A stretch of 26,919 nucleotides of DNA from Bugula neritina (Eukaryota > Animalia > Bryozoa), in contig CAXIUT010000302.1 of NCBI GenBank assembly GCA_964035545.1, positions 1-26,919 of the forward strand. The letters are read 5' to 3'. Below the pieces are notes generated by a model that saw only the letters and a program-made list of their open reading frames with translations, was not told where the DNA came from and searched no databases. The translations under genes and the position numbers were made by a program. This document shows, in pieces, positions 17,331 to 25,353 of this stretch; position 1 is the first letter of the stretch, and the number at the start of each line of letters is the position of its first letter.

Positions 17331-17637
17331 TGCGGTCATGGGTGGGCTGACACGTCACGCAGTGGCACCGACCTGGGCAGCGAAGATGCCCTAAGATAGC
17401 TTGACTATGAGTAATGTACATAAAAAGAAAAGATATGGTGGTCATGGGTGGACTTGTAACGCGTCATGCAATGACACCGACCGAGGTAGCAAAGATACCT
17501 CGTATTCGTGTTACCACTCTTACACTGAAAAGGAAATGGTGGTCATGGGTGGACTGACGCGTCACGCAGTGGCACCGACCCGGGCAACGGAGATGCCCTA
17601 AGATATCTTGACTATGAGTAATGTACTTAGAAAGATA
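17331..17637 (-). repeat. Three ~101-105 bp tandem repeats containing the 3' end of tRNA-Met
   Basis: The core TGGTGGTCATGGGTGGACT occurs exactly at 17436, 17537 and 17638 (period 101) and in degenerate form at ~17331. Units 1 and 3 are near-identical; unit 2 has a different distal part. Confidence 0.92.
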
Positions 17638-17685
17638 TGGTGGTCATGGGTGGACTTGAACCACCGACCCCAGCATTATGAATGC
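17638..17685 (-). tRNA. 3' fragment (48 bp) of tRNA-Met(CAT); att site, not an intact tRNA
   Basis: Minus strand reads GCATTCATAATGCTGGGGTCGGTGGTTCAAGTCCACCCATGACCACCA: anticodon arm with CAT, T arm with GTTCAAGTC, acceptor 3' strand and CCA. No D arm or 5' acceptor strand upstream. Confidence 0.88.
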
Positions 17686-17732
17686 GGTCAATTGGTTTAC
17701 CTGCAATGGCAGAAAATAGCTAAAAATGGACA

Positions 17733-17890: not shown

Positions 17891-18874
17891 TCAACTGAGA
17901 GCAACTCCAATATCTGACGCAATTAGGGACAAAACACTCTCTTCCAATGGCCACTCTTCCGTAACCCTATTTTTATGCGTATTTAACATCCAATACACAA
18001 AAAGAACTACACTTTGTCTATAAAAACTAGTTACTTCTGCATTAGTCAAAATTCTATCTGCCAAAAAAGAGTACTTGTCTTGGGATAAAAGCTCACATAT
18101 ATCAGTAATAGAATTTGCGCATATGACGTCTTCAAATTCATCCCAAATGACAATGCTCGACTTCTGATTTAGCGGCTTTCGTCCAGTCATCTCATAATAG
18201 AAATCGTCCAATCTCTCTTGAACTTTAAATTCGACCAGAGGGCCATGATTTAGCCTTTTTACTACTTCTTGAAAATACTCATCCGTTGTTTCAATTAAGG
18301 CCATACTCCTTGCGACTGTTCTATTTATTTTAGGCTCTACCTTTCTTTTCGCTTTATAAATGGCATCATGTGTGAGTTCTGCATGTGCATGTTGAAGCAA
18401 TGTCCTAACTTGCACTTCACAACACACATTTGTAGGTATAGCTAAGTTATTTATAGTCGTTTCACGTAAGGGCCTAAGAACATAATGTACGGACTGATAG
18501 GTAAATAGCAAAGGGGCTGATTCTCTCTCAGTCATAAAGTGTCTACATTCCTCATACTCCCATCCTTGATCATTCTTGATCGTGTCACATACTAAGTTTA
18601 AATCGCTTAATAACAACACAACAAATCTTATACCAACTTTATCCTCAATTTCCGAATATGGATCAGCATAGCTTTTAGATGGCCGATAAAAAGCTTTATC
18701 TATTAACGAATTCTCGTCTTTAAGTCTATAAGACGGCGGCACTTTGAAAAAAACTTCAGGCTTGTGCCCTTTATCGTTTAATGAGCTACAAACCTGATCT
18801 AATATCGCTACCGCCCATGCTTCGTATAGTTTTTCTTCGGACCTCCACTTTTCTATGAGCTCACGCTGATTCAT
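17891..18874 (-). CDS. RelA/SpoT-family synthetase-only protein (small alarmone synthetase-like) with a C-terminal helical extension
   Basis: Synthetase motifs YRLKDENSLIDK, IEDKVGIRFVV, YQSVHYV, EVQVRTLLQHAHAELTHDAIYK. No HD hydrolase, TGS or ACT domain. Confidence 0.9.
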   Translation of the reverse strand: MNQRELIEKWRSEEKLYEAWAVAILDQVCSSLNDKGHKPEVFFKVPPSYRLKDENSLIDKAFYRPSKSYADPYSEIEDKVGIRFVVLLLSDLNLVCDTIKNDQGWEYEECRHFMTERESAPLLFTYQSVHYVLRPLRETTINNLAIPTNVCCEVQVRTLLQHAHAELTHDAIYKAKRKVEPKINRTVARSMALIETTDEYFQEVVKRLNHGPLVEFKVQERLDDFYYEMTGRKPLNQKSSIVIWDEFEDVICANSITDICELLSQDKYSFLADRILTNAEVTSFYRQSVVLFVYWMLNTHKNRVTEEWPLEESVLSLIASDIGVALS

Positions 18875-19971
18875 TCTTGATTTACTATCAAATCCTTAAT
18901 CGTGACTTTAGTCCACCTAGTATCCTCTGCGACTCCTTCCTCGTTAGCATCAGGTGTAATCGTTTCTATTGTCACATATTCATCTAATACATCTGCGGGT
19001 GCTAGAATCTGAATATTCTTCCTAAACCTTAGTTTGCGAGTCTTTAGTTTGCTCACAATATACTCGGTGTCTTTAGTAAAACTACCTTGTGGCACATCAG
19101 AGTCACGCATGAAATTTTCATAACTGTCCTTCGTTGCGGTATCTACAAAATATTTTTCACCAAAATCTGAAGAACCGATAGCTTGAGCGGTATCAACTTT
19201 TAAATAGGTAACCAACGCATTCATCAAATCATTTTTTTTCTCAACGGAGACATCCAAATCAGAAACAAACTGCTTAGTGCTTTCATAAAACATCATTGTA
19301 GTTCTAGCGCTTGATTGAGGGTAACCACAACCTAAAAAGTCTATGTAAAAATATTTTGCTGCCGCCTTTCCTTCCGTTTTACTGATCTGATAATCAGATA
19401 GCATTACAATCCATTTTTCATTAAGGTTCTCAGGCTCCACTTCACTAGTACTTTTTCGGAAAAATCCTGCTGTTTTATATAATTTTGTGCCAGGTGTTAA
19501 CAATAATTCCTCAACAAACTTTAACGTGATTTCATCATCCACGGTGGTTTCTTTCTCATAGCCACTATGAACCTCAGCTTTGATAATACCGAGATAACTT
19601 TTCGGTAAGGCTGAATATTTTCCAGTAAAAACTATTACAATTCCTCCCGGTATATTTCTTGTTTGCTGAGCATAAGCAAGCTTTGTGGCTACATCATATG
19701 ATGACACAGCAAAATCTTCATCATTCAGATCCACCATTGAGTTAATTAACTTAGGCAATGAGTTGGCACCTTGGTCAAATATCTCCATTTGAACTGCTCT
19801 TGAAGAACTACCTAAAGAATCTGTTATTCGAGAAATAAACGTATTCTTTGCACTTTGCTCAAAGTTCGTAAAATCATGGCTTTGAATAGGCTGAACAATA
19901 CTCCCTTCACCATCTCGCTTAAAAACTTGATGGATAATGATTCTATCCACACTCAAATTCAGTAATTCCAT
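18871..19971 (-). CDS. NA37/YejK-like nucleoid-associated family protein
   Basis: N-terminal L.VDRIIIHQV, IPGGIVIVF, YLGIIKAE, LYKTA, AAKYFYIDFLGC, T..FY and size (~366 aa) fit NA37-like proteins. Likely start is ATG 19971 with AGGGCGG upstream. Its stop overlaps the next start (ATGA). Confidence 0.75.
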   Translation of the reverse strand: MELLNLSVDRIIIHQVFKRDGEGSIVQPIQSHDFTNFEQSAKNTFISRITDSLGSSSRAVQMEIFDQGANSLPKLINSMVDLNDEDFAVSSYDVATKLAYAQQTRNIPGGIVIVFTGKYSALPKSYLGIIKAEVHSGYEKETTVDDEITLKFVEELLLTPGTKLYKTAGFFRKSTSEVEPENLNEKWIVMLSDYQISKTEGKAAAKYFYIDFLGCGYPQSSARTTMMFYESTKQFVSDLDVSVEKKNDLMNALVTYLKVDTAQAIGSSDFGEKYFVDTATKDSYENFMRDSDVPQGSFTKDTEYIVSKLKTRKLRFRKNIQILAPADVLDEYVTIETITPDANEEGVAEDTRWTKVTIKDLIVNQE

Positions 19972-20388
19972 TTCAACCGCCCTGTATTGATTATGAGTTT
20001 CATTTAAACGCAAAAAATATTATCTAGCTACTGAAAACTATGACAATAGCTCCAGTATACATGAACGAAGCTGCTAACTATAAGTCAATCAACTGCAATT
20101 TTACTTTGACTTATTAAACCAAATCACCGATAAAACAAACAATTAAAGCTCACAAAGCTCTGTAACAAGGAATTTCCTACTTTCAGCCAAGAGGACAATG
20201 CGCATACGGGTAAGGCCTGAATTTTTATGGAGGTTCATCGAAACTGTCGCCCACCTTGTCAGGTTTACGCGCCGCTAAACTATAAACTCATAATTCTCCG
20301 CTTGGTAGCTCTTTGGTTTCAGCTTTATGTGGCGCAAAACTAAACACTATCTTGGGAATACCTTAAATACAAATTTAATCAATCAAGC

Positions 20389-21270
20389 ATGAATACAAAC
20401 AAAAAAGGAAAAGCTCCCTATGGATACCAATGGTCTGACGGTGAACTCATATTCAAAAAACCGGAATGCGATATTTACGGTCTTGCTTTTGAGCTGTATT
20501 TTTTGACTGGCCGCATCGGTACTACGGCTCGGCTTCTTAATGAACGAGGCTTCTTGAGCCAACACAAAAGCCCCTTCTCCACTTCTACAGTTCGACGCAT
20601 GCTAACTAACAGTGTCGCAAAAGGAATCTATGAAAAGTCTGCTTCCGCAGACACCGGCGAAGATTGCTCTGTATTAGCACCCGCAATTGTGAGTGAGGAT
20701 ACTTGGAACCAAGTCCAATCCATGATCGCCGAGGCCGCCAATGCAAAATCTCGCGTTCCACGACAAGACATCTTCGTGGGTTTGATCGATTGCGATTGCG
20801 GAACTCCGATGGACCTGCCCTCCAAATCCAAAGAGTATCAATGCTCTGGCTGCAACAATCGTGTTTTAAAGGAAGATTTACATTCTGCCTTTGAAACGGA
20901 ACTAAAGGGGTTGGAAATACCGCCTAGTCATGAACTACAACGCTATGCCAAAGTCACTCTATTGGAAGATGAAATTGATCCAAGTTCCCTCCTCAAATCC
21001 GTTGATAAAAGTATTGAATCCCTGTTTGAGCTCTACGAACAGCAAAAAATTGGTGAACCAATATTCACAGAGCGCATGGCAAAACTAACGAAACGCAAAC
21101 AGCAACTTTTGAGTAACCTCAGTCATCAACTAACTGAAACAACGGATACCTTATCAGATTTATGGCCAACACTTGCCTATGCTGAACAACGCCTCATACT
21201 AGAAAGCCTGCTCCAACGCATTACTGTTTCAAAAACCAAGGTTACCTTTTCCTTTTTCTCTCTTTTTTAA
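20389..21270 (+). CDS. Large serine recombinase-like protein lacking the N-terminal catalytic domain (recombinase domain, Zn ribbon, coiled coil)
   Basis: G.APYGY, TARLLNERG, FSTSTVRRMLTN...KG, PAIVSEDTWNQVQ, GLIDCDCGTPM...YQCSGC. No Y/IxRVST catalytic motif in the ORF or visible upstream. Confidence 0.8.
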   Translation: MNTNKKGKAPYGYQWSDGELIFKKPECDIYGLAFELYFLTGRIGTTARLLNERGFLSQHKSPFSTSTVRRMLTNSVAKGIYEKSASADTGEDCSVLAPAIVSEDTWNQVQSMIAEAANAKSRVPRQDIFVGLIDCDCGTPMDLPSKSKEYQCSGCNNRVLKEDLHSAFETELKGLEIPPSHELQRYAKVTLLEDEIDPSSLLKSVDKSIESLFELYEQQKIGEPIFTERMAKLTKRKQQLLSNLSHQLTETTDTLSDLWPTLAYAEQRLILESLLQRITVSKTKVTFSFFSLF

Positions 21271-21546: not shown

Positions 21547-21771
21547 ATGATGCTAACTGATACAGCACAACTTTTGTATGACCAATACGGTACACTAACG
21601 CTGAACACACGACAGCTTGCCAAGGTGCTCCATTATCGAACACCTCGGGTATTGCTCAATGCGATTTCAGCGGACCGTTGTCCGGTCCATACTTTTAAGG
21701 TCGGCAAACACCGTGTCGCTGATATTCGCGATGTCGCGGAACATTTAGACACACTGCGTCGCTTTAAATAA
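21547..21771 (+). CDS. Small HTH DNA-binding protein, PrtN/excisionase-like
   Basis: 74 aa; LLYDQYG..TL....LAKVL...P..L.NAI....PV.TFKVG..RVADIRDVAEHLD. SD-like GAGG upstream and a terminator directly downstream. Confidence 0.7.
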   Translation: MMLTDTAQLLYDQYGTLTLNTRQLAKVLHYRTPRVLLNAISADRCPVHTFKVGKHRVADIRDVAEHLDTLRRFK

Positions 21772-22367: not shown

Positions 22368-25353
22368 TTATGTTCGCCTCGTTAGGATTTTAGCAACGAC
22401 TGTTTGATGAATTGACCGACGCTCTTCCCCCACATCAACCTTATTGGATTCCACCATCCGTCCTCCCACGTGATGAGCCCCTGGTTTCGTCGTCAATTCT
22501 CTCTTAGCTAGACCATGAATTGAGATCATGGCCTCACTCAGTGCCAACACCTCACATTGCGAGACCAAATCAGTCTCATCGAGTTTGGACCTTAATCCGT
22601 CGCGCCACTTAGGATCTTCTGAAACAATCCAGACTTGGTCCACGCCAAAAATTGAGGCATTTTTAATGTTGTCTACTTCGTGAGTCACCGACGTGGATAC
22701 TGAAATCTCACACGCGATTCTACGTTTATCCTGACAGAGCAACACATCAATGTGCTGACCGTCCCCACAATGAGCTTCAAGCTGTGCCTCTAAGCCTAGT
22801 TTTTGCGCAGTATCACACAGCAGGGCTTGTATTGTTTTATGCGCTTCGCCTCCTTTGCCACCTCTATTTGTCAACGGCACTTCCGTACTTCCTTCCGGTG
22901 AATCCACCTTGACTGAGTCCTGTGCTGGCTTCACTTGTCCGAGAGACTCATAGATCAAGTGCTCTACTTCCTCTTTAGGTGTGCCGTATCGTTGCCGTGA
23001 ATGATTTATAATCGCTTCCACTTTTTCAGCGGCCTTTACTTCATCAATCTCCGGCATCATGGGCCGTCGATAAATTAAAATCAAACGCCGAGCGCTCCGC
23101 TCGCATAATCGCTTGTCCGACCCCAAGACTTTGTAGGTCACCCGCCTCGAATGAAGAAAAGCCCGGCTGCAATGCTTTGGCGTCCTTATCACCCAATCGA
23201 AAACACACACGGCTAAACGGATTGGCCAAAACGCTTTCCGCCACATCCGGGTCTTTGCCCTCTAATTGACGTAATTGCTGGTGCGCCAGCACAAACCCTA
23301 ATTGGTATTTACGCGTACCACTTAGAATGGACTCCATGCTCGGCGTAATAAAGTTGTGGAACTCATCAATATACAAATAAAAACGGCACTCGCTCCTCTT
23401 CGGGAATCGCCTGCCGGGCATAGGCCATTTGGTTAAACTTAGTCACCAACAAGGTGCCCATCAAATAGGAGTTCTCGACCCCAATGGCGCCGTGAGAGAG
23501 TTTGGCCAACAAAATCTTACGACCCTGCATCACCTCCTCAAAGTCTATTTTGTTTTTCTTCTGGGCCACCATATTGCGAATCGGCTTGGGCCGTAAAAAC
23601 GTATCGAGCCGGGTCAGTACAGGGCCCTGAGGCTTGCCAGAGAGCATGGCAAACTCACGCTCCCAATAAAACACGTTTTCTGGATCGCGCACCGTTTCAA
23701 GATGCTCTCGACGAAAATCTTTGTCTACTAAAAATCGGCGTAGTAGGGGCAAGGTACCGCCCTCCTCACTCTCTAGCATGGCATTGATGCCATTGGCCAG
23801 CACGCTGTTCATTTGATCGCCCCAGGTACTGGATAAGCGTCTAAACACAGACGTCAGATCGGAAGCCAATAGAATGCTCTCCAAATCCGAGTGTGCATCT
23901 AAAATATTAAACCCAACGGGATAGGCTTCATCAGACGGATCAAACACAATCACATCGTCCATCCGGTCTTCAGGCACGCGTTTGAGGACAGCATCAATCA
24001 AATCCCCGTGAGGGTCTAATACAGCCAACCCCTGCCCCATCTCCATATCCTGACAAATAAGATTCAGCAACATGGTGGATTTACCTGTTCCTGATGCGCC
24101 GATCAGGTGCATATGACGCATGCGATGGGTTGGCGTTAAGCCCACCGGCACTGTTTTGGCTTCTATGCTCATTGTGGCCTAACGCAAACGCATGACCGAT
24201 GACCATATCAGGCGCGGCCTTAGTACGCTGGGTAACCCGTTTGAGCTTAGCGGATCGCAAAGACGCATCCGGCAGGTGTGCCAGCGCCGTTAATTCATTG
24301 GCATTTAATAAAAGGCCGCTTCGATGAGTTGTTCGTTGCACCACATCAGCCGCATGGCATGCCTGTCATAGCCTTCATTGCTCAGCGGAAATAACGCATT
24401 ACTGCCGGGGTTATCAAACTGAGTCATGGCCCCACTCAGATCTCGTAGAATCATGGCTCGTCGTTGTTCATCAAGAGATGCGGCACCAATGCGAATCAAT
24501 CCAGCATAGAGAGGGGCTGCAATTTTTTGTTTTGTTAGCACCAGCATCTCTGGGGCATCGGCAAAGAAGGCACTGCCGTCCCCGTTAGTTACCGAATCGA
24601 GCAAAGCCTCAGACCAAATCGGGTTTGCGGGCTCAAACAATAATTGCAGCACCCCACACTCACCACTGGTTTAAACCTGAGAGTGCACCTGTCATACCGT
24701 CAGAGAATCAATGCTCTTGAGATCGGTATTAAGAGGCCGCATCACCTCTTGATCTAGCCCAAACTCAATCACGGATTGCGCCGACCAGTCCTGCCCCCAT
24801 TTCGTTGCCAAACAGTCGTTCGATTGCTCAATCACGCAATCCGGTTTCATGCGCCTCTAGCTGACGAATGACCGTATCGGCATCGGTTTCAGCACAACTA
24901 AGCAAGACAACGATCTCTTCCATCGACCCCACAAGCTCAAAACTCAACGGCGCACTGACATAATGCAAGGTCTTAAGAATGGTTTGCATCTAGCTTTGTT
25001 GTGCTTTTTAATGACTGAGGCAGCAACAGATGTAACTCCACCCGCTCATCCCAAACCTCTAAGGGCTCGCATTCGGGAACTCAGCCTCTGTGTCAATCGG
25101 TTCAGGAGCAGCTCCCTGATTTGACCCCACATTCTGAAATGAATCCGCAATTCGGCTTAGCCAAGTGTGATGCCGCCCATCGTCATGATTGACGCCCATC
25201 GTCACGATGCGACTCATGCTCGTAAAACGCCAAGTCTTTGGGGCACGGTGCGATTCGGGGCTCCAACTTAAGCGGTACGTCATACACATCCCATCCTCGT
25301 AATCGCCGCTCCCATTGGGCAAAGAGTTGTGTTCTTCGTTCAGCCAAGGACAT
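22368..25353 (-). pseudogene. Frameshifted ~990-aa VirD4/TrwB/HerA (DUF87)-like ATPase with a C-terminal PD-(D/E)XK-like domain
   Basis: Reconstructed by hand from ATG 25353 (MSLAERRTQLFAQWERRLRGWDVY, GGAG upstream) across about 10 frame changes. Walker A GASGTGKS, LDPHGDL, Walker B FYLYIDEFHNF, LAHQ; C-terminal H...LE...IDV...IACEIS. May be intact in vivo if the indels are sequencing errors. Confidence 0.8.

What the first reader, a model, noticed from the sequence alone, without database searches (positions are those of the whole stretch)
17891..19971. NA37/YejK-like protein plus RelA/SpoT synthetase: candidate two-gene antiphage or toxin-antitoxin system at the island edge
Seen: two co-oriented genes coupled by an ATGA stop/start overlap (18871-18874). 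They are AT-rich (hand-counted lines 18001 and 19321 have 17/60 and 22/60 G+C, against 37/60 for line 23581) and form the first cargo inside the att site. The synthetase keeps all four synthetase motifs, lacks hydrolase and regulatory domains, and has a ~110-aa C-terminal extension. Known: synthetase-only RSH enzymes include toxins that make (p)ppGpp or (p)ppApp or pyrophosphorylate tRNA CCA ends, and CapRel is a phage-activated example; YejK/NA37 proteins bind DNA. Inference: the NA37-like protein senses foreign or damaged DNA, or acts as antitoxin, and gates the RSH effector to cause growth arrest. I recall this pairing being predicted computationally as a conflict system but cannot verify it, and I know of no mechanism for it.
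Basis: partly seen in the sequence, partly recalled or inferred. Interest (0 to 1): 0.85.

Follow-up and report, generated by a model that had tools for sequence, protein, structure and literature searches.

The report
PANGU-type NAP plus alarmone-synthetase defence pair

Summary
On the minus strand, a 366-aa YejK/NA37-family protein (18871-19971) overlaps by ATGA a 327-aa synthetase-only RelA/SpoT protein (17891-18874). Both lie in a 36-39% G+C cassette beside a tRNA-Met 3' fragment.

The pair is a conserved, co-inherited unit. I found the same order and the same 4-bp overlap in 11 other loci from Gamma- and Betaproteobacteria, Campylobacterota and Bacillota. 53 of the top 120 homologues of each protein share a contig, and partner distances correlate (Mantel r 0.94).

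The synthetase model shows an alarmone-synthetase domain, a linker helix and an acidic all-helical C-terminal domain. The partner's only significant fold match is E. coli YejK.

This anatomy matches type I PANGU (Pag1A + Pag1B/gRel; bioRxiv 10.64898/2026.04.06.716658). In that system, phage-driven chromosome degradation frees the DNA-bound NAP. The NAP binds the synthetase's acidic domain and switches on pppGpp synthesis, which aborts the infection.

I file the locus as a new member of a known kind. The co-folding test gave no answer. The contig is bacterial (Arenicella-like) inside a 216-Mb assembly that an earlier scan follow-up calls a ciliate. Earlier scan notes cover only this same stretch and the neighbouring tRNA-like repeats.

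The parts
18871..19971 (-). pag1A-like gene: 366-aa YejK/NdpA (NA37) family nucleoid-associated protein, 41.3 kDa; the inferred DNA-bound sensor and activator
   Evidence: Pfam PF04245 at E 5.7e-14. The AF2 model (pLDDT 79) has E. coli YejK 9be2 as its only significant PDB fold match, E 8.5e-09 over 346 columns. 465 homologues of about 365 aa at 53-69% identity. phrog_1974 at E 1.7e-44.
17891..18874 (-). pag1B-like gene: 327-aa synthetase-only RelA/SpoT homologue (gRel-type small alarmone synthetase), 38.2 kDa; the inferred effector
   Evidence: Pfam PF04607 at E 1.3e-12. More than 1400 homologues of about 327 aa aligned over the full length. phrog_32462 at E 1.5e-68. R50, K52, D78, R83, Y126, E153, Q155 and R157 are invariant.
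18350..18874 (-). SYNTH (alarmone synthetase) domain, residues 1-175
   Evidence: AF2 model has pLDDT about 90 here. The best Foldseek matches are B. subtilis and S. aureus SAS1/SAS2 (RelQ/RelP), E 1e-08, TM 0.75-0.8 by target. CapRel ranks 40th.
18248..18334 (-). long linker helix, residues 181-209 (low confidence, probably flexible)
   Evidence: DSSP helix 181-209 with pLDDT 53-58.
17894..18241 (-). acidic all-helical C-terminal domain, residues 212-327; the equivalent of the 'DNA-mimicking' DMK domain that binds the NAP in PANGU
   Evidence: pLDDT 85-95 with eight helices. Net charge -9 over the last 115 aa (pI 4.4); over residues 212-327 as aligned, the charge is negative in 83% of 58 family members. 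Collinear in all relatives.
18871..18874 (-). ATGA stop/start overlap coupling the two genes
   Evidence: Sequence read. The same 4-bp overlap occurs in L001, L002, L003, L004, L007, L008, L010, L012, L013 and L014. In E. coli L009 the overlap is 1 bp. In L011 the caller's N-extended start hides it.
20019..20046 (-). promoter-like site (TTGTCA-16-GATAAT) upstream of the ATG at 19971
   Evidence: Consensus scan, 10 of 12 matches. This is weak evidence: the scan found fewer sites than in shuffles.
17638..17687 (-). 3' fragment of a tRNA-Met-like gene (anticodon loop with CAT, T arm, acceptor strand, CCA); likely att remnant marking the island edge
   Evidence: Read directly. It is unique in the window. 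ARAGORN does not call it as a tRNA.

Best explanation
This is a two-gene abortive-infection defence module of the type I PANGU kind, carried as low-G+C cargo of a decayed integrated element. SHOWN HERE: a YejK-fold nucleoid-associated protein gene is translationally coupled to a synthetase-only RelA/SpoT gene. The synthetase consists of an intact alarmone-synthetase domain, a flexible linker helix and an acidic helical C-terminal domain. The two genes are inherited together across phyla, mostly on mobile elements. INFERRED from the published family mechanism: in uninfected cells the NAP dimer is clamped on chromosomal DNA and the synthetase sits in the cytoplasm as an inactive tetramer. When a phage degrades the host chromosome, the NAP is released. 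It then binds the acidic, DNA-like C-terminal domain of the synthetase, breaks up the tetramer and forms an active 2:1 complex. [quoted passage not shown] This drains ATP and GTP, shuts down transcription and translation, and stops phage production at the cost of the infected cell.
For: Domain calls: NA37 at E 5.7e-14 and RelA_SpoT at E 1.3e-12, with no other domains. The NAP model's only significant fold match is YejK 9be2. The synthetase model matches the Pag1B description of N-terminal toxSYNTH, helical linker and acidic C-terminal domain. The last 115 aa carry net charge -9. The catalytic G-loop Tyr (Y129 in the tested protein) corresponds by motif to invariant Y126, and D78, E153 and R157 are also invariant. 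Protein sizes are 41.3 and 38.2 kDa, against 40.6 and 37.5 kDa for the tested P. aeruginosa pair. The NA37 gene lies directly upstream, in the same order, in 11 other loci: Microbulbifer, Pseudomonas, the nearest metagenomic relative, Methylococcaceae, Halomonas, Gilvimarinus, a Klebsiella plasmid, the E. coli chromosome, N. gonorrhoeae, Sulfurovum and a C. botulinum C/D plasmid. 53 of the top 120 hits of each protein share a unique contig length. Partner identities co-vary (69/61, 57/52, 54/51, 43/44, 42/47, 33/35, 31/36%) with Mantel r 0.935, and 0 of 2000 permutations reach it. The Klebsiella and E. coli variants add a DUF4231 gene upstream (a SLATT-family domain, by my recollection), as the preprint describes for some type I operons. 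Contexts are mobile and patchy: integrases, prophages, plasmids, and only 2 of 5426 complete E. coli genomes.
Against: The tested Pag1A/Pag1B sequences were not obtainable: no supplement is held and no PDB entry matches. Identity to a proven system and the interface and DNA-contact residues (R258/R306/H314; K200/R203/K204) therefore could not be checked. The source is a single preprint that has not been peer reviewed. No complete known defence system lies next to the pair in the window, and PADLOC gives only a weak partial hit for the synthetase (PDC-S33, E 2e-06) and fragments of a mad8/HerA-like ATPase. Expression is unknown, as no RNA run holds the locus. The host bacterium's own YejK, RelA and SpoT are not in the assembly, so redundancy could not be assessed.
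Confidence: 0.72

Rival explanations
1. Classical type II toxSAS toxin-antitoxin pair: the synthetase is constitutively toxic, and the upstream NA37-like protein is its antitoxin, stabilising the island or firing when antitoxin synthesis stops.
For: The gene order (small overlap, putative neutraliser first) resembles many TA operons. Other synthetase-only RSH proteins are TA toxins (stated). The pair sits on mobile elements.
Against: For the NAP + gRel family, the preprint reports no toxicity of either gene alone or of both together. It also reports that the synthetase is inactive alone in vitro, is activated by the NAP, and becomes toxic only with a NAP mutant that cannot bind DNA. A 366-aa DNA clamp is atypical for an antitoxin.
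Confidence: 0.08
2. Same architecture but different output or trigger. In this roughly 50%-diverged marine ortholog the effector makes (pp)pApp or pyrophosphorylates tRNA like CapRel/FaRel2, or the NAP is released by a cue other than phage nucleases, such as island excision, replication stress or filamentous phage.
For: RSH toxins are chemically diverse. Identity to named relatives is only 35-61%. Two of the 11 related loci lie next to inovirus prophages, which do not degrade host DNA.
Against: All synthetase motifs are invariant across the family, so a change in chemistry within it is not indicated. The best fold matches are (p)ppGpp-making RelQ/RelP, with CapRel far lower and only through the catalytic core. 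The preprint excluded tRNA labelling for its member.
Confidence: 0.1
3. Not defence: an element-encoded NAP that regulates the mobile element (as NdpA2 does on the P. aeruginosa ICE PAPI-1), together with an ordinary small alarmone synthetase used for stress signalling.
For: NA37-family proteins on islands can be regulators of transfer (PMC8565334, listed; abstract only read). Some relatives sit between housekeeping genes with no mobile or defence neighbours (L012).
Against: Strict co-inheritance with a synthetase carrying a dedicated, conserved acidic partner-type domain argues for a two-component machine. Distribution is patchy and rare (2 of 5426 E. coli genomes). Both families have PHROG matches. 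Homologous operons gave direct antiphage phenotypes.
Confidence: 0.07
4. An inactive relic: the pair is intact in frame but no longer expressed or functional within a decaying island.
For: Its neighbours are degraded: a 5'-truncated serine recombinase and a split ATPase gene. The gonococcal copy of this family is broken.
Against: Both ORFs are full length and collinear with all relatives, every invariant family residue is kept, the coupling overlap is preserved, and a promoter-like site lies upstream.
Confidence: 0.03

Closest known systems
Type I PANGU (Pag1A NAP + Pag1B/gRel toxSAS), bioRxiv 10.64898/2026.04.06.716658
   Same: A YejK-like NAP of about 365 aa sits directly upstream of, and in one operon with, a synthetase-only RSH of about 327 aa. 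That RSH is built from toxSYNTH, a helical linker and an acidic C-terminal domain, and keeps the catalytic G-loop Tyr. The pair is patchy in distribution and linked to mobile or defence elements, and the partners co-evolve.
   Different: This copy has not been tested. Its identity to the tested Ferrimonas, Pseudomonas and E. coli systems is unknown. It has no SLATT/DUF4231 gene and no complete known defence system within the window. Its C-terminal domain is the most acidic of the 58 compared (residues 212-327 as aligned: -9, median -3).
Type II PANGU and the other NAP-centred operon clusters (same preprint)
   Same: They use the same sensor principle: a YejK-like NAP paired with an effector carrying a DNA-mimicking domain.
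   Different: Their effectors are a transmembrane protein, lysozymes, a PAPS reductase and others. Here the effector is an RSH synthetase.
CapRel(SJ46), fused toxSAS antiphage toxin-antitoxin (PDB 7ZTB)
   Same: It shares the synthetase-only RSH catalytic fold, a C-terminal regulatory domain and an abortive-infection logic.
   Different: CapRel is one polypeptide, auto-inhibited by its own C-terminal domain, triggered by phage capsid protein, and pyrophosphorylates tRNA. Here the fold match to CapRel is weak (rank 40, rmsd 14 Å), the C-terminal domain is acidic and all-helical, and a separate NAP partner is encoded.
RelQ/RelP (SAS1/SAS2) small alarmone synthetases of Firmicutes
   Same: They are the best structural matches for residues 1 to about 205 and are homotetrameric (p)ppGpp synthetases.
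   Different: They are housekeeping enzymes of about 200-230 aa with no C-terminal partner-binding domain and no NAP partner. Sequence identity is 17-21%.
gRel subgroup of the RSH superfamily (Atkinson et al. 2011, PMC3153485)
   Same: It is a synthetase-only subgroup of mainly Gammaproteobacteria, and the preprint places Pag1B in it. The 2011 tables list N. gonorrhoeae FA 1090 as a gRel carrier, and gonococcal DNA holds an NA37 + RSH locus of this family.
   Different: Subgroup membership is defined by phylogeny, which I could not run against reference gRel sequences.
E. coli YejK (PDB 9BE2) and island-borne NdpA2 of PAPI-1
   Same: They belong to the same NA37 family, and YejK has the same fold.
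   Different: YejK is a stand-alone, abundant chromosomal protein at 13% identity. NdpA2 is described as a regulator of ICE transfer. Neither is reported as coupled to an RSH gene.

Membership tests
Type I PANGU (Pag1A/Pag1B) | Sensor is a YejK/NdpA-family NAP (IPR007358/PF04245; preprint filter HMM E < 1e-10 and length >= 300 aa) | tested here: met
   PF04245 at E 5.7e-14, 366 aa. The fold matches YejK 9be2 at E 8.5e-09. The criterion is quoted.
Type I PANGU (Pag1A/Pag1B) | Two-gene operon: the NAP gene adjacent (< 40 bp) to a synthetase-only RSH (gRel toxSAS) gene | tested here: met
   4-bp ATGA overlap with the NAP gene first. PF04607 is the only domain in the second protein.
Type I PANGU (Pag1A/Pag1B) | Effector architecture: N-terminal toxSYNTH, alpha-helical linker, acidic C-terminal 'DMK' domain | tested here: met
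   AF2 model: SYNTH 1-175, helix 181-209, helical domain 212-321 at pLDDT 85-95. The last 115 aa have net charge -9 and pI 4.4. True DNA mimicry of the surface was not computed.
Type I PANGU (Pag1A/Pag1B) | Catalytic G-loop tyrosine (Y129 in the tested Pag1B) and intact synthetase motifs | tested here: met
   Y126 in FTYQSVH, D78, E153, Q155 and R157 are invariant in 57 sequences. The correspondence with Y129 is by motif, not by alignment to the reference.
Type I PANGU (Pag1A/Pag1B) | Sequence homology to, or clade membership with, the experimentally tested Pag1A/Pag1B (Ferrimonas futtsuensis, P. aeruginosa, E. coli) | not testable with these tools
   No supplementary file is held and no PDB entry matches. 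Indirect support only: homologous pairs in Pseudomonas (54/51%) and E. coli (43/44%), and sizes matching the P. aeruginosa proteins.
Type I PANGU (Pag1A/Pag1B) | NAP dimer binds the effector's C-terminal domain (2:1 complex) | tested here: inconclusive
   The complex-prediction job returned 'no answer', so it is not evidence either way. Partner co-variation (Mantel r 0.935) shows co-inheritance, not binding.
Type I PANGU (Pag1A/Pag1B) | Basic DNA-contact residues lining the NAP pore (K200/R203/K204 in the tested protein) | tested here: inconclusive
   A low-confidence loop at residues 196-204 carries K198 and K202 (K202 conserved in >= 90% of sequences) at nearly the same numbering. Without the reference sequence the mapping is a guess.
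Type I PANGU (Pag1A/Pag1B) | Genetic linkage to known defence genes (within 10 kb; used by the preprint to pick candidates) | tested here: not met
   PADLOC finds only fragments of a mad8/HerA-like ATPase at 23044-24172 and nothing else. The preprint used this as an enrichment filter, not as a requirement of the family.
Type I PANGU (Pag1A/Pag1B) | Antiphage protection needing both genes; NAP-dependent (pp)pGpp synthesis | not testable with these tools
   Needs experiments.
Classical toxSAS toxin-antitoxin | Synthetase toxic on its own and neutralised by the adjacent gene product | not testable with these tools
   Reported as not so for the NAP + gRel family.
CapRel-type fused toxSAS | Single polypeptide whose C-terminal antitoxin domain folds back on the synthetase; basic tRNA-binding patch | tested here: not met
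   The C-terminal domain is acidic and all-helical. CapRel aligns only weakly (rank 40-42, TM 0.37-0.40, rmsd about 14 Å). A separate partner gene is present.
gRel subgroup (Atkinson 2011) | Placement in the gRel clade of an RSH superfamily tree | not tested
   No reference gRel sequences were at hand. There is an indirect link through N. gonorrhoeae and through the preprint's own assignment.

The most novel reading that the evidence does not exclude
The most novel reading not excluded is that this marine, roughly 50%-diverged ortholog keeps the NAP + gRel architecture but differs in what releases the NAP or in what the enzyme makes. For example, it might respond to filamentous-phage or island replication rather than host-DNA degradation, or produce an adenine-based alarmone. 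That would extend PANGU beyond the T4-type trigger described so far.
Probability: 0.1. Interest if true: 0.45.

Novelty: new member of a known kind. Interest (0 to 1): 0.3.

Why it matters
The locus adds an intact, strongly acidic-tailed member of the NAP + gRel (type I PANGU) family from an uncultured Arenicella-like marine bacterium. My survey independently confirms the family's strict pairing, 4-bp coupling and co-inheritance across four phyla-level groups, and on plasmids, prophages and islands. For annotation, the 'nucleoid-associated protein' + 'GTP pyrophosphokinase' neighbours now labelled generically in RefSeq, and missed by PADLOC v2, can be read as a defence pair.

Tried and rejected
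- Co-folding of 2 x NAP with synthetase residues 205-327 (complex prediction) returned 'no answer' (score 0.00, alignments not used, partner fold uncertain). I do not count it for or against binding.
- PDB sequence searches with both proteins found no PANGU entry. They returned only RelQ/RelP-type SAS for the synthetase and nothing for the NAP.
- The preprint's supplementary table is not held. I therefore could not map the interface residues R258/R306/H314 or the DNA-contact residues K200/R203/K204, nor measure identity to a tested system.
A named Ferrimonas or P. aeruginosa reference could not be fetched.
- PADLOC gave no system-level match.
- Rfam and ARAGORN found nothing in the window.
- A search for a second att copy found none.
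- Translating 19972-20393 in three frames found no remnant of the recombinase's catalytic domain.
- The sequencing-run search found one holder, probably the source sample, and no RNA. I did not lay reads.
- The idea that the contig is bacterial DNA transferred into the ciliate genome was rejected. The contig has no telomeric ends and carries only bacterial genes.
- A paper on Pseudomonas protegens phages carrying NdpA/YejK turned out not to mention an RSH partner.
Full report
**1. What is in the sequence**

The window carries two co-oriented minus-strand ORFs.
- The upstream ORF runs from 19971 (ATG) to 18871. The mechanical ORF starts at TTG 20013.
- Homologues begin at the residues encoded from 19971 (consensus MQLLNL). 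A TTGTCA-16-GATAAT site lies at 20046-20019. I therefore take 366 aa as the product.
- The downstream ORF runs from 18874 to 17891 and encodes 327 aa.
- G+C falls to 0.36-0.39 between about 17.7 and 20.5 kb, against 0.44-0.50 around it.

**2. What the proteins are**

Family searches:
- Pfam gives NA37 (PF04245, E 5.7e-14, residues 12-330) for the first protein. It gives RelA_SpoT (PF04607, E 1.3e-12, residues 50-176) for the second, with nothing else.
- NCBIfam shows only sub-threshold similarity to YejK and to the YjbM-type GTP diphosphokinase.
- PADLOC v2 has no model for either protein beyond a weak partial PDC-S33 hit.

Synthetase model (AlphaFold2 on 57 homologues, mean pLDDT 84.7):
- A mixed alpha/beta domain spans residues 1-175.
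- A long low-confidence helix spans 181-209.
- A confident eight-helix C-terminal domain spans 212-321.
- The best PDB matches are the (p)ppGpp-making small alarmone synthetases RelQ/RelP over about 205 residues. CapRel appears only at rank 40, with rmsd about 14 Å.
- The last 115 residues carry net charge -9 (pI 4.4).

Conservation and the partner:
- In the 57-sequence alignment the nucleotide-binding and catalytic residues (R50, K52, D78, R83, Y126, E153, Q155, R157) are invariant.
- The partner's model (pLDDT 79) has one significant PDB match, the E. coli YejK DNA clamp 9be2 (E 8.5e-09, 346 columns). The next hit is five million-fold worse.

**3. Is the pairing conserved?**

Yes, strongly.
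- The synthetase has more than 1400 database relatives of about 327 aa that align end to end at 49-61% identity. The partner has 465 of about 365 aa at 53-69%.
- 53 of the 120 best hits in each list share a unique 'longest contig' length with a hit in the other list. This shows that they are neighbours on the same contigs.
- I inspected 11 other loci, and in every one the NA37 gene lies directly upstream. Most have the same 4-bp overlap.

The 11 loci are:
- Microbulbifer, beside an integrase and prophage-like genes.
- Pseudomonas resinovorans, beside Fic, an Mrr-type nuclease and an inovirus.
- The nearest metagenomic relative, on an integrase island with a divergent small resolvase.
- A Methylococcaceae genome, next to a PIN gene.
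- Halomonas.
- Gilvimarinus, beside an inovirus and an integrase.
- A conjugative Klebsiella plasmid and an E. coli chromosomal island, both with an extra DUF4231 gene upstream.
- A phage-like plasmid of C. botulinum C/D.
- Sulfurovum.
- N. gonorrhoeae, where the synthetase is in two pieces.

Further measures:
- Identities of the two partners to the window pair fall in step (69/61, 57/52, 54/51, 43/44, 42/47, 33/35, 31/36%).
- Over 58 pairs the two distance matrices correlate with r 0.935, or 0.81 within the close set. None of 2000 permutations reaches either value. This shows inheritance as a unit without partner swapping; it does not by itself show binding.
- The family is rare within a species: 2 of 5426 complete E. 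coli genomes.
- Both proteins match PHROG families full length.

**4. What is known**

Full-text search for NA37 with RelA or toxSAS returned one relevant paper, bioRxiv 10.64898/2026.04.06.716658, April 2026. It defines PANGU as two-gene defence operons with a YejK-like NAP.

Type I pairs the NAP (Pag1A) with a gRel-subfamily toxSAS (Pag1B). Pag1B is built from an N-terminal toxSYNTH domain, a helical linker and an acidic 'DNA-mimicking' C-terminal domain. For operons from Ferrimonas futtsuensis, P. aeruginosa and E. coli the authors report the following:
- Protection against T4 or Bas34 of 3-4 logs, needing both genes and the G-loop Tyr.
- No toxicity of either gene, alone or together.
- No activity of Pag1B alone, and NAP-dependent conversion of ATP + GTP/GDP/GMP to AMP + (pp)pGpp, with no tRNA labelling.
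- A 2.64-Å cryo-EM complex of two Pag1A with the Pag1B C-terminal domain.
- A Pag1B tetramer that Pag1A dissociates.
- T4 escape through denA (endonuclease II) mutations.
- DNA binding by Pag1A that needs fragments of 400 bp or more.
- Relocation of Pag1A from the nucleoid on infection.
- Toxicity when a DNA-binding-deficient Pag1A is co-expressed.

The paper also notes SLATT-bearing variants of type I and co-evolution of the partners. The gRel subgroup itself dates from the 2011 RSH classification.

**5. Membership**

Four defining features were tested here and met:
- NAP family and size.
- Operon coupling to a synthetase-only RSH.
- The three-part effector architecture with an acidic C-terminal domain.
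- Intact catalytic residues.

Protein sizes (41.3 and 38.2 kDa) match the tested P. aeruginosa proteins (40.6 and 37.5 kDa).

Other features could not be settled:
- Direct homology to the tested sequences could not be checked. No supplement is held and the structure is not in the PDB copy.
- The residue-level interface and DNA-contact positions remain unmapped. I note only that a flexible loop at residues 196-204 carries conserved lysines at almost the same numbering as the published K200/R203/K204.
- The co-folding job gave no answer.
- Linkage to known defence genes is not seen in this window. That was the preprint's enrichment filter rather than a family requirement.

I therefore file the locus as a new, untested member of type I PANGU. 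My confidence is about 0.85 in family membership and 0.72 in the full mechanism applying here.

**6. Mechanism and rivals**

The best explanation is the PANGU model: a DNA-bound NAP released by phage-driven chromosome degradation activates the synthetase through its acidic tail, and (pp)pGpp synthesis with ATP/GTP drain aborts the infection.

Rivals, in order of weight:
- The same machine with a different trigger or product (0.10).
- A classical TA pair with the NAP as antitoxin (0.08), contradicted by the family's experiments.
- An island regulator NAP plus an ordinary SAS (0.07).
- A silent relic (0.03).

**7. Context**

- The whole window is contig C311 of a 216-Mb, 321-contig assembly. It holds the only NA37 and the only RelA_SpoT match in that assembly.
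- An earlier follow-up in this scan calls the assembly a ciliate.
- The contig has no telomeric ends and its other genes are bacterial.
- Its RND pump is 76% identical to that of Arenicella xantha, and up to 87% identical to metagenomic proteins.
- Only one of three runs of the source study holds the locus.

I read the contig as DNA of an uncultured Arenicella-like gammaproteobacterium living with, or eaten by, the ciliate, not as ciliate DNA.

The pair lies about 200 bp inside a 50-nt tRNA-Met 3' fragment (17687-17638), which is preceded by three tRNA-like tandem repeats. On the other side lies a serine recombinase gene that lacks its catalytic N-terminal domain. An excisionase-like gene and a split HerA/TrwB/mad8-like ATPase follow. 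The island's far border is beyond the contig end.

**8. Verdict**

The functional reading is essentially right. The finding is ordinary in the sense that the kind is now described, so I score interest 0.3.

Noticed in passing
window 1-26919 (whole contig C311 of G000): The window is a complete 26.9-kb bacterial contig inside a 216-Mb assembly that an earlier follow-up calls a ciliate. It has no telomere repeats at either end and carries only bacterial genes. Its RND pump is 76% identical to Arenicella xantha and up to 87% to metagenomic proteins. Only one of three runs of the source study holds it. It is probably an associated or ingested marine gammaproteobacterium, not ciliate DNA.
   Followed up: partly
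window 17331-17690: A tRNA-Met-like 3' fragment (17687-17638, minus strand) is preceded by three tandem copies, about 101 bp apart, of its acceptor/T-stem end, joined to a different hairpin-rich sequence. ARAGORN and Rfam call nothing here. These may be stacked att remnants or tRNA-like elements. This is the subject of another first-stage note.
   Followed up: partly
window 20389-21270 (+) and 21547-21771 (+): The large serine recombinase lacks its N-terminal catalytic (resolvase) domain. It matches positions 242-561 of a 651-position integrase PHROG, and the 376 bp upstream hold no remnant of the missing domain. It is transcribed divergently from the PANGU pair. The nearest relative (L010) has a small resolvase gene in the same divergent position. 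An excisionase/PrtN-like gene follows.
   Followed up: partly
window 23044-24172 (-): Two overlapping ORFs (23366-24172 and 23044-23421) match consecutive parts of one HerA/TrwB-like ATPase (PADLOC mad8 positions 25-143 and 194-287; phrog_5156 positions 414-663 of 824). This looks like a frameshifted and truncated gene, so the island appears decayed while the defence pair is intact.
   Followed up: no
L002 8177-12981 and L013 9003-16981: In Pseudomonas resinovorans and in Gilvimarinus algae the NAP + synthetase pair lies directly beside a filamentous (inovirus-type) prophage carrying Coat_B, DUF2523 and Zot. Either this spot is a hotspot for inovirus integration or the pair travels with such elements.
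   Followed up: no
L007 6096-8659 and L009 6528-9078: The Klebsiella plasmid and E. coli chromosomal versions carry a DUF4231 gene (a SLATT-family domain, by my recollection) directly upstream. This three-gene form matches the SLATT variant mentioned in the preprint. Only 2 of 5426 complete E. coli genomes have it.
   Followed up: partly
L014 1593-3639 (N. gonorrhoeae record listed among plasmids, 2.17 Mb): An NA37 gene is followed, with the usual 4-bp overlap, by the synthetase in two pieces (124 aa, then 212 aa in another frame). This is a broken copy. The record is chromosome-sized although filed as a plasmid.
   Followed up: partly
L008 1-6966 (C. botulinum C/D plasmid p2CbBKT12695): A Firmicute copy of the pair (33/35% identity) sits just after phage structural and lysis genes on a 52-kb circular plasmid. 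The plasmid looks like a plasmid-prophage carrying the defence pair as a moron.
   Followed up: no
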